A stretch of DNA of 64,000 nucleotides from Histomonas meleagridis 2922-C6/04-290x. Lineage: Eukaryota > Protista > Parabasalia. The translations under genes and the position numbers were made by a program. This document shows, in pieces, positions 53,167 to 56,025 of the stretch. Numbering within the stretch: the first letter of the stretch is position 1; each line of letters begins with the position of its first letter. Location of the stretch: positions 78,466 to 142,465 of the forward strand of contig JAANOX010000046.1 in the NCBI GenBank assembly GCA_020184695.1, written 5' to 3'. The notes under the pieces are model-generated. The model saw only the letters and a list, made by a program, of their open reading frames with translations. It had not been told where the DNA came from and did no database searches.

Positions 53167-54156
53167 TCAATTATTATTTTCGTCATACACGTCAATTGAG
53201 TCATATGTTTGATATCCTTCAGCCAATTCTTCTGTTGATTTTCCAGGGAATGGAAGCACTGGACACGCCCATCTCCATAATGGCCCGTTTCCGCAGAATT
53301 CATCCATATTTTCTCTGCACGTTTCCTTTCTGAATGCATTTGGCGGAATTTGGTTCCACATTTCCCATCTCGTTCTGTTTTGTGATGAGTTGTATATTGT
53401 CGGTATTAAGAAAGAGACCATCATTGAGCAAAATGCAATAGCGACAACGAGCATAATGATGACAAAGAAAAAACAAATCGGAAAATTGACATTTGAAAAA
53501 CATGGAATAATTATTCGTATCGACCATATTGCATAAAGAAGTGTATATATGGAACCATATAAGTTAAATAACATAAAGAATTTGACATTGCGTTTACCAA
53601 TCCATGACGCGCACCATCCACATAAATGATCTGGTTGAAGAACATATCGTTGAGCTGATCGAAAAAAGGCTGATCGTGGTGGCCGTGGTTGGATTTGTAC
53701 CCACTGATATTGGTCTTCATTAGAAACAACACCGGCTATTGGATTTTCTTCGCCTGGTAATTGATTTTTATCTGCTTCGGAAAGACTCCAATAAAATGGA
53801 AAATAACCTGGACCTTCAATAATAACTAAGAAGTATGGAATAAAAAATAAAATCATAAAAATTAAAAAAATAATTGTTGAAAGTATGGATTCTAATAACG
53901 AAACAAGAGTGAATGATCCCCATACAATAACAATATATGAAAAAAGAAATATGATTCCAACAAGGAGTGGCATTGTAAGATCTACTTTCCAATGTTCGAG
54001 AAAAATTGATAGAGAATTTACTTGATACTTATTGCAACAACAATACTTACGTGATAAAGCTTTTGTAACACCGGGGAAATTTTCAATGTTAATTATATCT
54101 GATGGATTTCTACCAGATTGTTCTAATAAGTTTCCATTTTCTGGTACTTCTCCCAT
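53167..54156 (-). CDS. DHHC-family palmitoyltransferase, DHLC variant
   Basis: Four TM segments and PRPPRS...PDHLCGWCASWIGKRN.KFF. Confidence 0.85.
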   Translation of the reverse strand: MGEVPENGNLLEQSGRNPSDIINIENFPGVTKALSRKYCCCNKYQVNSLSIFLEHWKVDLTMPLLVGIIFLFSYIVIVWGSFTLVSLLESILSTIIFLIFMILFFIPYFLVIIEGPGYFPFYWSLSEADKNQLPGEENPIAGVVSNEDQYQWVQIQPRPPRSAFFRSAQRYVLQPDHLCGWCASWIGKRNVKFFMLFNLYGSIYTLLYAIWSIRIIIPCFSNVNFPICFFFVIIMLVVAIAFCSMMVSFLIPTIYNSSQNRTRWEMWNQIPPNAFRKETCRENMDEFCGNGPLWRWACPVLPFPGKSTEELAEGYQTYDSIDVYDENNN

Positions 54157-54251
54157 TTTCCCCTTTAACGTTTTTCGATCGTAAAATAAAAACGACGCCG
54201 TTTATAACAAACGGCCCCTCAAATGGCGCCAAAACGGTTTCCCAAAAGTTC
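54157..54251. promoter_or_regulatory. 95-nt bidirectional promoter (DHHC/CLK) with M3-like motifs on both strands
   Basis: AACGGTTT (+) at 54233-54240 and GGCCGTTT (-) at 54216-54209. Inverted repeat GCCGTTT/AAACGGC at 54197-54215. Confidence 0.55.
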
Positions 54252-55304
54252 ATGAATACAAAACAGCCTCGGACAGAACAAGATAGGCTGTTTTGTCATC
54301 CAGGAGATATTATAGGAAAAAATTACAGGGTTATAAATTCTGCTGGTGAAGGAACATTTTCAAATGTATATTGGTGCAAGGATATCCAATATCAATCCGA
54401 TGTCATCGTTAAAGTTTCAAGATCAAGAAGATCATATACCGATGCAGCAAATGAAGAAATAAAGACAATGGAATTACTCAATCGACTAGATCCAAGCCAT
54501 CGATTTTTTGTTCAATATTTTTCTTCTTTTTGTTTTAGAGGACATGTATGCCTAGTGTTTGAGAGACTTGGCCCTTCGCTATTTGAAACCCTTCGATATA
54601 ATTACTTTAATCCATTTCATATTGAAACTATTCGTAATTTCATGTGGCAAATTGTAAATTCTGTAGATGTTCTTCATAAAAACCAAATGGTACATACTGA
54701 CCTTAAATTAGAAAATATTTTACTTAAAGGAGGTCTTGTAAACAGAGAAGGAAGAGATATTGAAACTGGAAGAGACTCAATGTCGATTAGATTAATTGAT
54801 TTTGGATCACTTGATAGTGGTTCTGCATGGCATTACCACCTTGTTACAACCAGACATTACAGAGCACCTGAAATACTCATGGGTCTTCGATGGGGATATG
54901 AATGTGATATTTGGAGCTTGGGATGTATACTTGTTGAGTTATCACTTGGAAGAATTTGCTTTGATGCAAGGGATTTAATTGAACATTTATATTTAATACA
55001 ACATATGATTGGACCAATACCTAAAAAAATGTGGGTAAATTGCACAATAAATGAGTTGAGACCTTTTATACGAGAAGGACACATTAGATCAAGTTCATTA
55101 AACAGACAAGCTTATGAAGAAGCTCGAAGAAAGCCAACACTTCGACGCATTTTAGATTTCGATTCATCTCTTTCAGACCTTGCATTGTGGTTACTGAATC
55201 CTGACCCTGATGAAAGACCAAGAACAGATTCCATCCTCAGACACCCGTTTTTTAACGTATTCCACAAACGGTCGTCATTCAATTACCACGGAAAAAGCGG
55301 TTAA
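54252..55304 (+). CDS. CLK: CLK/LAMMER-family CMGC protein kinase
   Basis: GEGTFSNV, HTDLKLEN, IDFG, VTTRHYRAPE and EHLYLIQHMIG (LAMMER equivalent). ATG 54252 preferred over 54102. Confidence 0.9.
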   Translation: MNTKQPRTEQDRLFCHPGDIIGKNYRVINSAGEGTFSNVYWCKDIQYQSDVIVKVSRSRRSYTDAANEEIKTMELLNRLDPSHRFFVQYFSSFCFRGHVCLVFERLGPSLFETLRYNYFNPFHIETIRNFMWQIVNSVDVLHKNQMVHTDLKLENILLKGGLVNREGRDIETGRDSMSIRLIDFGSLDSGSAWHYHLVTTRHYRAPEILMGLRWGYECDIWSLGCILVELSLGRICFDARDLIEHLYLIQHMIGPIPKKMWVNCTINELRPFIREGHIRSSSLNRQAYEEARRKPTLRRILDFDSSLSDLALWLLNPDPDERPRTDSILRHPFFNVFHKRSSFNYHGKSG

Positions 55305-55338
55305 GACCGGCCATTGTCCATTCTGCATTCTCAACAAA

Positions 55339-55434
55339 GTATGTACTCTTGGCTCTGATGACTTTTCCTCTCGACAGAAATTATGTTGATAGCTTTTAAA
55401 GTGCCTGAGCCACATGTTTCAAACTAACACACAG
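55339..55434 (+). other. Canonical trichomonad spliceosomal intron (96 nt) downstream of the CLK stop codon
   Basis: Starts GTATGT at 55339 and ends ACTAACACACAG at 55423-55434, the fused branch-site/3'SS motif of T. vaginalis type A introns. Confidence 0.85.
55350..55412 (+). ncRNA. Candidate intron-encoded box C/D snoRNA
   Basis: Terminal stem TGGC/GCCA, box C TGATGA 55356-55361, D'-like CAGA 55375-55378, C'-like ATGTTGA 55383-55389, box D CTGA 55405-55408. Confidence 0.65.
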
Positions 55435-55534
55435 AAATATAATTAATTTGTATGTTATATAATTATTAATAAATTTTATATTTGTTATAAATAAAAGTGT
55501 TTATTGTTTTTACTTGTGTTATCGAGGAATTACG

Positions 55535-55557
55535 TTTTTTTTTTTTTTTTTTTTTTT
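55535..55557. repeat. Poly-T run (23 nt)
   Basis: Read directly. Confidence 0.9.
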
Positions 55558-55699
55558 AGTTTTGTTATTTTTTGAATTTGATCATTTTGAAATTTTCTTT
55601 AAATATAGGAAATTCATGCTTCCTTCTTTCTCTAATGCTAGTGCATTTGGACAAATATTGTTAAAGATGGAATGTTATTTTATTCTTATTTAATTACAG

Positions 55700-56025
55700 T
55701 TCAAAATGCTAAAAATATTAATTTATATATTAATATTAATATAATATTTGCCTTTTTTATTTAATGTTATAAAATCTTATTTGGAAAATATTTAAAATAC
55801 TTAAAACAGCATTTTTGATGGCATCCAAAAAAGGTCATACTAAAATGGTTAAATTACTTTTTGCGAAAAAAGGATCAAAAATAACTGCAAAAGATATTCG
55901 TTTGTCTTGTCCATGATTTATATAAATAATTCTGGATTTCAAAATAATATGTGAAAATTATTTAAATTATTTAATACAGCACTTATATTGGCATCTGAAA
56001 ATGTTCATATGCAAAAAATTAATTA
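55700..56025 (+). pseudogene. Interrupted ankyrin array remnant, locus 3
   Basis: 89-nt spacer (55717-55805), 30-codon block TAFLMASKKGHTKMVKLLFAKKGSKITAKD (55806-55895), 80-nt spacer (55896-55975), then a degenerate TALILASENVH block. Confidence 0.8.

What the first reader, a model, noticed from the sequence alone, without database searches (positions are those of the whole stretch)
55350..55412. The 3'-UTR intron appears to encode a box C/D snoRNA
Seen: TGGC-TC-TGATGA...CAGA...ATGTTGA...CTGA-GCCA gives a 4-bp terminal stem and C, D', C' and D boxes in correct order, filling most of the intron and ending about 15 nt before the branch A. Putative guides are CTTTTCCTCTCGA (D') and TAGCTTTTAAAGTGC (D). 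The D' guide is complementary over 9 nt to CGAGAGGAA, the generic eukaryotic LSU sarcin-ricin loop sequence (unverified for this species). Inference: an intron kept as a snoRNA host in an almost intronless genome, coupling snoRNA biogenesis to splicing.
Basis: partly seen in the sequence, partly recalled or inferred. Interest (0 to 1): 0.78.

Follow-up and report, generated by a model that had tools for sequence, protein, structure and literature searches.

The report
Intron-framed snoRNA aimed at sarcin-ricin loop
A 63-base guide RNA of the kind that directs methylation of ribosomal RNA sits inside a 96-base intron-like cassette just after a kinase gene of the poultry parasite Histomonas meleagridis. 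It is one of at least 18 such cassettes, it is conserved in Trichomonas (where the sequence was published as an unvalidated intron), and its conserved guide matches the ribosome's sarcin-ricin loop.

Summary
Window 55350-55412 has a 4-bp terminal stem and C, D', C' and D boxes in order. It lies inside a 96-nt GTATGT...ACTAACACACAG intron (55339-55434) that starts 34 nt after the stop of a CLK/LAMMER kinase. Only 4 of 300,000 shuffles of the intron interior reproduce the C box, D box and stem.

The genome is the Histomonas meleagridis attenuated-strain assembly. It holds at least 18 cassettes of the same build, and most carry guides that match conserved rRNA sites. An ortholog of this cassette lies on a metagenome contig. 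Another is "putative intron" #17 in the Trichomonas vaginalis S3 Table of PMC12316389, where snoRNAs were not recognised.

Across 7 genes in 4 organisms the conserved guide core is TTCCTCTCG, the exact complement of the sarcin-ricin loop CGAGAGGAA. The predicted methylation site is LSU G2565 (E. coli G2661).

The 3'-UTR position looks incidental. Other cassettes are intergenic, a GGCC...CATT promoter-like motif precedes them, and kinase orthologs lack the cassette.

Splicing and the mature RNA were not seen; the probable RNA-seq contigs retain the intron. The D guide has no credible target.

The scan had already found this cassette class on other DNA of this genome.

The parts
54102..55304 (+). 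CLK/LAMMER-type dual-specificity kinase ORF (stop TAA 55302-55304). It is the upstream neighbour, and its transcript probably runs through the cassette.
   Evidence: ORF. Best named relatives are Tritrichomonas foetus 'Ser/Thr kinase AFC1' (62%) and T. musculus (59%), Pfam PF00069. Contigs of runs X1-X4 run unbroken from the ORF to 55435-55525.
55309..55322 (+). GGCCATTGTCCATT: promoter/initiator-like motif (GGCC, then 1-6 nt, then YCATW), 17-30 nt upstream of the 5' splice site. It is a candidate start of a dedicated mini host transcript.
   Evidence: A GGC[CT] element 21-39 nt upstream of GTATGT is present in 8 of 10 cassettes. The full motif occurs once in the 64-kb window, here. GGCCATW N8-38 GTATGT gives 24 genome hits against 8 in the control, and 6 of the 24 are snoRNA cassettes. 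Its function is inferred, not shown.
55339..55434 (+). 96-nt spliceosomal-type intron: 5'SS GTATGT 55339-44, branch ACTAAC 55423-28 (branch A 55427), 3'SS AG 55433-34.
   Evidence: The same signals frame protein-coding introns of this genome (L013, L043, L050, L052) and match the published trichomonad motif (PMC12316389). Splicing was not observed.
55350..55412 (+). Predicted mature box C/D snoRNA, 63 nt. Terminal stem TGGC/GCCA, which extends to UGGCUC/GAGCCA in the MFE fold.
   Evidence: Pair 4 of the stem is T-A here and C-G in the T. vaginalis ortholog (stem GCGGC/GCCGC), a compensatory change.
55356..55361 (+). C box TGATGA
   Evidence: Conserved in the metagenome ortholog; TGAAGA in T. 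vaginalis #17.
55362..55374 (+). D' guide CTTTTCCTCTCGA. The conserved core TTCCTCTCG (55365-55373) is antisense to the LSU sarcin-ricin loop CGAGAGGAA. The fifth nucleotide upstream of D' (C 55370) faces LSU G2565.
   Evidence: 9 Watson-Crick pairs at guide positions 2-10 with LSU 2562-2570. The core and its 1-nt spacing to CAGA are identical in L089 and T. vaginalis #17. The core is shared with the paralogs C14 and C256 and with Tv #7 and Ts #14.
55375..55378 (+). D' box CAGA (one change from CUGA)
   Evidence: Identical in L089 and T. vaginalis #17. Cassette C237a uses the same variant, next to a 13-bp rRNA match.
55384..55389 (+). C' box TGTTGA
   Evidence: Identical in L089 and T. vaginalis #17.
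55390..55404 (+). D guide TAGCTTTTAAAGTGC. It is probably not a conserved functional guide.
   Evidence: The best match is 10 nt to SSU 590-599, in the V4 variable hairpin; 12% of shuffled guides do as well. The D-proximal part differs in L089 and in T. vaginalis #17.
55405..55408 (+). D box CTGA
   Evidence: conserved in the orthologs.
55468..55473 (+). AATAAA, the candidate poly(A) signal of exon 2. Contig ends lie at 55486 and 55491.
   Evidence: An AATAAA lies 16-90 nt after the 3'SS in 9 of 10 cassettes. Contigs of X1 and X4 end at 55486 and 55491. The poly(A) role is inferred.

Best explanation
Window 55350-55412 is a genuine box C/D snoRNA gene of Histomonas meleagridis. It is embedded in a 96-nt cassette with full trichomonad splice signals.

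Shown:
- The box and stem anatomy.
- Membership in a family of at least 18 like-built cassettes in this genome, whose guides fit conserved rRNA sites.
- Orthologs in a metagenomic parabasalid, in T. vaginalis and in T. stableri.
- A guide core (TTCCTCTCG) conserved in 7 genes from 4 organisms that is exactly antisense to the LSU sarcin-ricin loop.
- Three fibrillarin genes in the genome.

Inferred:
- The cassette is transcribed by Pol II, either from its own GGCC...CATT start about 20 nt upstream, or as the tail of the kinase mRNA, or both.
- Snu13, Nop56, Nop58 and fibrillarin assemble on the C/D and C'/D' motifs.
- Splicing releases the intron, and exonucleases trim it back to the terminal stem.
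- The D' guide then pairs 9-10 bp with the sarcin-ricin loop and directs 2'-O-methylation of LSU G2565 (E. coli G2661).
- The older paralog type (C14, C256) is set one nucleotide over, on A2564 (E. coli A2660).
- The closed snoRNA stem would also bring the 5' splice site and branch point to within about 33 nt, close to the short trichomonad introns.
For: Anatomy and chance level.

Family:
- Pattern scans gave 24 hits against 9 in the control, and 43 against 9.
- Twelve cassettes were read in full: introns of 91-100 nt, GTATGT then 4-11 nt then the stem and C box, and D box then 14-24 nt then WCTAAC then 6-7 nt ending in AG.
- Six more are known from matched strings.

Guides:
- 10-13-nt matches abut D' in conserved rRNA segments.
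- Fisher combined p = 3e-5 over the 12 full cassettes.

Orthologs:
- L089 (OBKV01029602.1) keeps the 5'SS, stem, C box, D' guide, D' and C' while its flanks are unalignable.
- Its neighbouring protein is only 46% identical to the H. meleagridis homolog.
- T. vaginalis S3-table #17 has the same order, D' CAGA, C' TGTTGA, guide CCATTCCTCTCGT and a compensatory stem change.
- Tv #7 and Ts #14 are orthologs of the paralog type.

Target:
- The boundaries of guide conservation coincide with the boundaries of sarcin-ricin loop complementarity.
- The spacing to D' is fixed within each type.

Other: three fibrillarin genes. The probable RNA-seq contigs cover the cassette.
Against: - No mature ~63-nt RNA and no spliced junction were seen. 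The contigs of four runs from one study retain the intron.
- T. vaginalis authors list 14 of the 18 cassettes as 'No RNAseq evidence' and #17 as 'Not assembled, Low coverage'.
- On its own, the 9-bp sarcin-ricin loop match is no better than 25% of shuffled guides.
- No 2'-O-methylation inside the sarcin-ricin loop tetraloop is known to me in any organism. The SNORD91 site in H95 is a different nucleotide (PMC12288042).
- No Rfam family reaches threshold.
- The D' box has one mismatch to the consensus, and the C box is preceded by C rather than a purine.
Confidence: 0.75

Rival explanations
1. The snoRNA is real, but it is not a feature of the kinase 3' UTR. The cassette would be a self-contained mini host gene: a GGCC...CATT start, an exon 1 of about 20 nt, the intron with the snoRNA, an exon 2 of about 55 nt, and AATAAA. 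It would merely abut the kinase stop codon.
For: - At least five other cassettes lie between opposite-strand ORFs (L018, L031, L034, L036, L039).
- The upstream motif is shared by the cassettes and occurs only here in the window.
- The ortholog L089 sits head-to-head with an unrelated ORF.
- CLK orthologs of T. foetus, T. musculus and a third parabasalid have no 3'-UTR intron.
- Earlier scan notes describe sister cassettes as non-coding host genes.
Against: - There is no TAAA or AATAAA between the kinase stop and the intron, so the kinase mRNA probably ends at the cassette's poly(A) site.
- Contigs run unbroken from the kinase to 55486-55525.
- The transcription start was not mapped.
- Both sources may operate together.
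Confidence: 0.5
2. The snoRNA is produced without splicing. The intron-like signals would be retained for another reason, and the RNA would be cut or trimmed directly from the unspliced transcript.
For: - Only intron-retaining contigs were seen.
- T. vaginalis cassettes lack RNA-seq splice support.
- The Pfam DBR1 C-terminal domain was not detected, though this is uninformative.
Against: - Complete 5'SS, branch and 3'SS motifs are kept in all cassettes read in full in three species, although there is no coding frame to preserve. They are identical to those of coding introns.
- A spliced mini-host product of about 75 nt would escape standard RNA-seq, and contigs drop rare variants.
- T. vaginalis cDNAs commonly show both spliced and unspliced forms (PMC12316389).
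Confidence: 0.2
3. The D' guide does not direct sarcin-ricin loop methylation. The snoRNA would be an orphan, would act as a folding chaperone on helix 95, or would target another RNA.
For: - The duplex is only 9-10 bp, within chance for a single guide.
- The sarcin-ricin loop tetraloop is unmodified in the organisms I know of.
- Tetrahymena TtnuCD32 pairs at the base of the sarcin-ricin loop stem without methylating it (PMC6315972).
Against: - The conserved core equals the sarcin-ricin loop complement in 7 genes from 4 organisms, with the distance to D' fixed within each paralog type.
- The alternative site, LSU 52-61, needs the extra T residues at the 5' end of the guide, which T. vaginalis lacks.
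- No better match exists in the 10-kb rDNA unit.
Confidence: 0.3
4. The boxes are a chance arrangement inside an ordinary 3'-UTR intron.
For: No Rfam gathering hit. The fold z-score of -1.3 is not significant.
Against: Only 4 of 300,000 shuffles reproduce it. The family has at least 18 members, and there are cross-species orthologs.
Confidence: 0.01

Closest known systems
T. vaginalis 'additional putative intron' #17 (chr_V:6794930-6795042, minus strand; S3 Table of PMC12316389)
   Same: Ortholog. GTATGT...ACTAACACACAG frame, terminal stem, C box, guide core TTCCTCTCG one nt before D' CAGA, C' TGTTGA, D CTGA.
   Different: It is 113 nt rather than 96 nt, has a 5-bp GC stem and C box TGAAGA, and its D guide differs. 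It was published as an intron sequence 'not validated by RNAseq' and was not recognised as a snoRNA.
Yeast and vertebrate intron-encoded box C/D snoRNAs (for example U18 in EFB1, U24, U14)
   Same: One snoRNA per intron in sense orientation, a C/D k-turn with a short terminal stem, and presumed release by splicing, debranching and exonuclease trimming.
   Different: Here the D box lies only 14-24 nt before the branch motif, whereas I recall about 50 nt being optimal in vertebrates. The snoRNA fills about two thirds of the intron, and the exons are tiny and mostly non-coding.
Non-coding snoRNA host genes (vertebrate UHG and GAS5; fungal hosts as in Neurospora, PMC2780460)
   Same: The spliced exons carry no protein; the introns are the product.
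   Different: The units here are miniature, about 170-250 nt in all, and mostly have one intron. One two-intron unit lies on C268. They share a GGCC...CATT upstream motif.
Archaeal C/D sRNAs
   Same: Compact size (about 63 nt), both C/D and C'/D' motifs, and short guides of 13-15 nt.
   Different: This one is eukaryotic, intron-framed and guides cytoplasmic rRNA. The resemblance is in size only.
Human SNORD91 (28S Gm4618 in helix 95) and Tetrahymena TtnuCD32
   Same: They are snoRNAs that pair with the sarcin-ricin loop helix (PMC12288042, PMC6315972).
   Different: They pair with the stem or base of H95, not the GAGA tetraloop. TtnuCD32 does not methylate.

Membership tests
Box C/D snoRNA | C box (RUGAUGA) near the 5' end and D box (CUGA) near the 3' end | tested here: met
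   TGATGA at 55356-61 (preceded by C, not a purine) and CTGA at 55405-08. 159 of 300,000 shuffles match by chance.
Box C/D snoRNA | Terminal stem flanking the C and D boxes | tested here: met
   TGGC/GCCA, 4 bp, or 6 bp in the MFE fold. One compensatory pair change against the T. vaginalis ortholog.
Box C/D snoRNA | Internal D' and C' boxes in the order C-D'-C'-D | tested here: met
   CAGA at 55375-78 and TGTTGA at 55384-89. Both are identical in L089 and in T. vaginalis #17.
Box C/D snoRNA | Guide of about 10 nt or more upstream of D or D', antisense to a stable RNA, with the target facing the fifth nucleotide | tested here: inconclusive
   The D' guide makes 9 Watson-Crick pairs (positions 2-10) with the LSU sarcin-ricin loop here, and 10 in T. 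vaginalis and in the paralogs. It is not significant alone but is phylogenetically conserved. The D guide has no credible target.
Box C/D snoRNA | Accumulates as a stable RNA of about 60-100 nt bound by fibrillarin, Nop56, Nop58 and Snu13 | not testable with these tools
   Only contigs of four runs were available, with no small-RNA data. The genome has three fibrillarin genes.
Box C/D snoRNA | 2'-O-methylation present at the predicted site | not testable with these tools
   Needs RiboMeth-seq or primer extension at LSU G2565.
Intron-encoded snoRNA | Lies in sense orientation inside a spliceosomal intron with functional 5'SS, branch point and 3'SS | tested here: inconclusive
   The signals are perfect and identical to those of coding introns of the genome. 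No spliced junction was seen in the contigs.
Intron-encoded snoRNA | The arrangement recurs or is conserved (one snoRNA per intron) | tested here: met
   At least 18 cassettes in H. meleagridis, and 18 in T. vaginalis plus others in T. stableri.
3'-UTR intron of the CLK kinase gene | The intron is a conserved part of the kinase transcript | tested here: not met
   T. foetus, T. musculus and a third ortholog lack it. The cassette ortholog L089 is next to an unrelated gene. In H. meleagridis the kinase transcript does appear to run through it.
Any curated Rfam snoRNA family | Score at or above the family's gathering threshold | tested here: not met
   No gathering hit. The best hits are SNORD12 at 17.3 bits against a threshold of 43, and sn2343 at 16.4 against 60. 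These reflect generic C/D resemblance only.

The most novel reading that the evidence does not exclude
Parabasalids would keep two ancient paralogous intron-framed snoRNAs that 2'-O-methylate the two toxin-target nucleotides of the sarcin-ricin loop. Type 1 (this locus, L089, Tv #17) would act on the G equivalent to E. coli G2661, whose 2'-OH alpha-sarcin-type ribotoxins need for cleavage. Type 2 (C14, C256, Tv #7, Ts #14) would act on the A equivalent to A2660, the ricin depurination site. That would be a modification inside the GAGA tetraloop not described in other organisms, and could make these ribosomes intrinsically resistant to ribotoxins. More broadly, such cassettes would be a reason why intron-poor parabasalids keep a spliceosome.
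Probability: 0.22. Interest if true: 0.8.

Novelty: new member of a known kind. Interest (0 to 1): 0.6.

Why it matters
Chen et al. 2011 (PMC3228867) called intronic snoRNAs "highly unlikely" in Trichomonas and Giardia. The only contrary hint I found is an "unpublished data" remark from 2008 (PMC2588526).

This locus and its at least 17 siblings show that a sizeable share of canonical long introns in H. meleagridis are snoRNA carriers. Among exact-motif introns of 78-105 nt, 10 carry snoRNAs, against 3 credible coding introns (a fourth coding intron is 71 nt).

They also explain what the 18 type-A "inactive" or unvalidated introns of T. vaginalis, and most of those of T. stableri, are. The authors suggested these might be remnants of non-transcribed genes.

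The focal snoRNA adds a specific, testable prediction: ribose methylation inside the sarcin-ricin loop, a site thought to be unmodified.

Tried and rejected
- **Rfam:** nothing at gathering thresholds.
- **D guide target:** the best site is a 10-nt AT-rich match in the SSU V4 hairpin. It is not above chance and not conserved.
- **Alternative D' target, LSU 52-61 (GGAGGAAAA):** rejected. The pairing starts only at guide position 4, and T. vaginalis lacks the extra T residues it needs.
- **Synteny with the kinase:** absent in three orthologs.
- **Route to the published T. vaginalis UTR introns through PRP18:** the word search found no Trichomonas protein, and H. meleagridis PRP18 has no such 5'-UTR intron.
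- **Exact-protein look-ups of the kinase, to find spliced transcript contigs:** nothing on record.
- **Second metagenome hit, L088:** a chance match in front of a coding region.
- **Supplements of Chen 2009 and Chen 2011:** not held, or no match to the guide.
- **DBR1 domain search:** no hit, but the control also rang nowhere, so this is uninformative.
- **MFE fold z-score of -1.3:** not informative for C/D RNAs.
- **MAFFT alignment of the 12 introns (A2):** it mis-registers the 5'SS and C boxes, so I built no covariance model.
- **Exact ACTAACACACAG motif:** only 4 occurrences in the genome against 3 in the control, so the motif alone does not find introns here.
- **Read laying:** given 2,401 letters.

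Full report
**Organism and setting**

G000 has 43,133,364 bases in 281 contigs. These are exactly the figures for the attenuated Histomonas meleagridis strain in PMC8529796. A PRP18 protein of the genome is 100% identical to a protein named H. meleagridis.

The window is AT-rich, at 19-36% GC. The ORF 54102-55304 is a CLK/LAMMER-type kinase. Its best named relatives are Tritrichomonas foetus 'AFC1' at 62% and T. musculus at 59%.

**The observation**

- stem TGGC/GCCA
- C box TGATGA
- 13-nt D' guide
- D' CAGA
- C' TGTTGA
- 15-nt D guide
- D box CTGA

All of this lies inside GTATGT(55339)...ACTAAC-ACACAG(55434), which starts 34 nt after the kinase stop. The stem ends 15 nt before the branch A.

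Shuffling the intron interior gives the C and D boxes in place in 159 of 300,000 trials. It gives a 4-bp stem as well in only 4 of 300,000. Rfam has no gathering-level hit. Four unrelated C/D models align to exactly 55350-55412 at sub-threshold scores. That is what a lineage-specific C/D RNA would give.

**A family of cassettes**

A scan of the genome for TGATGA N30-60 CTGA N5-35 ACTAAC gave 24 hits, against 9 for the reversed control. Nine of the 24 share one architecture:
- GTATGT, then 4-11 nt, then the stem and C box
- D box, then 14-24 nt, then ACTAAC, then 6-7 nt ending in AG
- total length 91-99 nt

Further scans added more cassettes:
- C237b, with C box TGAAGA
- C3 and C126, with branch TCTAAC
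- C142, C225, C256, C276 and a tandem pair on C268 (43 hits against 9 in the control)

That makes at least 18 cassettes. Twelve were read in full.

Among exact-motif introns of 78-105 nt, ten carry snoRNAs. Only three look like coding introns (L043, L050, L052), and a fourth coding intron, L013, is 71 nt.

**Guides of the family**

I located the rDNA unit and compared the guides with it. The segments just upstream of D' match conserved rRNA stretches:

| Cassette | Match | rRNA position |
|---|---|---|
| C42 | 13 nt | LSU 664-676 |
| C243 | 12 nt | LSU 435-446 |
| C237a | 12 WC + 1 GU | SSU 354-366 |
| C237b | 12 WC + 4 GU | LSU 2173-2188 |
| C281, C81, C126, C276, C142 | 11 nt each | — |
| C235 | 10 nt | SSU CCGCCCGTCG |
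| C202 | 10 nt | LSU 2485-2494 |

By my recollection the C243 site is the U18 target region, and the C235 site holds the C equivalent to E. coli C1402. Neither equivalence was tested.

With perfect Watson-Crick matching only, five of the twelve fully read cassettes beat 95% of shuffles individually. Fisher's combined p is 3e-5. The class is therefore a set of real methylation-guide snoRNAs, and the focal unit has the class architecture.

**Orthologs of the focal cassette**

One metagenome scan for C box plus guide plus CAG returned two contigs. L088 is a chance match.

L089 (OBKV01029602.1) is an ortholog. It reads GTATGT-TCTCTTGGCT-T-TGATGA-T-TTTTCCTCTCG-A-CAGA-TTTAA-TGTTGA-TAGC... CTGA-GC, and then the contig ends. 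Its flanks do not align with the window. Its upstream neighbour is an opposite-strand ORF whose H. meleagridis homolog is only 46% identical and lies on another contig.

A lead from earlier notes of this scan sent me to the S3 Table of PMC12316389. Entries 1-18 of the T. vaginalis "additional putative introns ... not validated by RNAseq" all have C/D snoRNA architecture. Many carry the same guides as H. meleagridis cassettes:
- #2 = C42
- #4 = C237b
- #6 = C142
- #8 and #13 = C235
- #11 = C81
- #15 = C276
- #16 = C268
- #18 = C3
- T. stableri #7 = C281, #4 = C202, and #11 and #13 = C225

Entry #17 (chr_V:6794930-6795042, 113 nt, status 'Not assembled, Low coverage') is the ortholog of the focal cassette. 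It has stem GCGGC/GCCGC, C box TGAAGA, guide CCATTCCTCTCGT, D' CAGA, C' TGTTGA and D CTGA. The fourth stem pair is T-A in Histomonas and C-G in Trichomonas, a compensatory change.

The authors did not recognise snoRNAs. [quoted passage not shown]

**Target**

On its own, the 9-bp match of the D' guide to LSU 2562-2570 (CGAGAGGAA, the sarcin-ricin loop) is equalled by 25% of shuffled guides.

The comparative data change that. A second cassette type shares the core TTCCTCTCG but nothing else apart from the box motifs. Its members are C14 and C256 in Histomonas, #7 in T. vaginalis and #14 in T. stableri. Three points support the sarcin-ricin loop as the target:
- Across seven genes in four organisms, the conserved block is TTCCTCTCG(T), the exact complement of (A)CGAGAGGAA.
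- The bases 5' of the core differ (TT in Histomonas, A in Trichomonas), and they sit where the rRNA could not pair anyway.
- The distance from the core to D' is fixed at 1 nt in type 1 and 2 nt in type 2.

The fifth-nucleotide rule then places the methyl group on LSU G2565 (E. coli G2661) for the focal type. For type 2 it falls on A2564 (E. coli A2660), if its degenerate D' is CAGC/CAAC.

The alternative site, LSU 52-61, fails in Trichomonas. No better match exists in the 10-kb rDNA unit.

The D guide pairs best with a V4 variable hairpin and is not conserved, so I treat it as non-functional or fast-evolving.

I know of no ribose methylation inside the sarcin-ricin loop tetraloop elsewhere. 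SNORD91 and TtnuCD32 touch other parts of helix 95. The target claim therefore stays a prediction, at about 0.55-0.6.

**Is it a 3'-UTR intron?**

At least five other cassettes lie between opposite-strand ORFs. Eight of ten have GGC[CT] 21-39 nt before the 5' splice site, followed by an initiator-like YCATW. The full motif occurs once in this 64-kb window, at 55309-55322, and it helps find new cassettes. Nine of ten have AATAAA 16-90 nt after the 3' splice site. The kinase orthologs of three other parabasalids have no such intron.

So the cassette looks like a self-contained mini host gene that happens to abut the kinase.

At this locus, however, there is no poly(A) signal between the kinase stop and the intron. 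Contigs of four runs run unbroken from the kinase through the intron to 55435, 55486, 55491 and 55525. These runs come from one study. They are flagged as 'RNA?', and their depth is 36-47 over genes against 0-5 between genes, which suggests RNA. So the kinase mRNA probably contains the cassette as well.

**Expression and splicing**

No joint skipping 55339-55434 appears in those contigs, so the unspliced form is what was assembled. Contigs drop rare variants. A spliced mini-host RNA would be only about 75 nt. T. vaginalis cDNAs typically show both spliced and unspliced forms. This is therefore weak evidence against splicing.

The argument for splicing is indirect. Full splice signals, identical to those of coding introns, are conserved around non-coding cassettes in three species.

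The genome encodes three fibrillarins. A DBR1-domain search found nothing, but it was uninformative.

**Literature and novelty**

- Chen et al. [quoted passage not shown]
- Simoes-Barbosa et al. 2008 mention T. vaginalis "intronic snoRNAs" only as unpublished data.
- The 2025 intron census lists the sequences without recognising them.
- My searches found no paper describing them.

This scan had already flagged sister cassettes elsewhere in this genome and reached the same reading. The focal locus is thus a new member of a known kind (an intron-encoded C/D snoRNA), with an unusual predicted target.

Noticed in passing
window 55925-56005: A short segment (about 55955-56003) is covered by hundreds of 33-50-nt contigs, with summed depth of 7,000-87,000 in all four runs. 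It is a very high-copy or highly expressed repeat, apparently an ankyrin-repeat-like module of the kind other first-stage notes describe in this window.
   Followed up: no
window 55435 (run X3): In run X3 the contig covering the kinase and intron ends at 55435, one base past the 3' splice site, and exon 2 has zero depth. The other three runs continue to 55486-55525. This may be coincidence or a graph break at the splice site.
   Followed up: no
G000:C268:52036-52254 (minus strand): Two near-identical C/D cassettes (guide ATGCACCACC, matching SSU 940-949) start 149 nt apart. This looks like a two-intron non-coding host gene and matches earlier scan note s1-321462.
   Followed up: partly
L083 (G000:C273:225138-225310, plus strand): GGCCATA...GTATGT is followed by a long nested inverted repeat (AACGGTTGAAACGATAT ... 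ATATCGTTCCAACCGTT, with an inner GGGGTTTAC/GTAAACCCC) instead of C/D boxes. It may be another kind of small RNA behind the same promoter-like motif.
   Followed up: no
L058 and L059 (G000:C253:424728-424824 and 448860-448958): Two near-identical 97-99-nt intron-like sequences (GTATGT...ACTAACATATCAG) with no open frame across the junction and no clear C/D boxes. Their nature is unknown.
   Followed up: no
window 55369-55384 versus L006 SSU 1041-1056: A 16-bp complementarity (14 WC + 2 GU) joins the D'-spacer-C' segment AGAAATTATGTTGATA and an AT-rich SSU stretch. It is in the wrong position for a guide and is probably an AT-rich chance match.
   Followed up: partly
upstream of cassettes L031, L039, L056, L018, L035, L022 (40-110 nt before the 5'SS): AACGTT, CCGTT and AACGG elements recur. 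They resemble, from memory, the Myb-type M3 promoter motif of T. vaginalis. They were not counted against a control.
   Followed up: no
PMC12316389 S2 Table (T. vaginalis): The validated type-A UTR introns of Lsm3 (3' UTR, 100 nt) and the two PRP18 paralogs (5' UTR, 102 nt) are in the size range of snoRNA cassettes.
   Followed up: partly
window 55534-55558: A run of about 25 T lies just downstream of the cassette's exon 2. Reads seem to be cut there.
   Followed up: no
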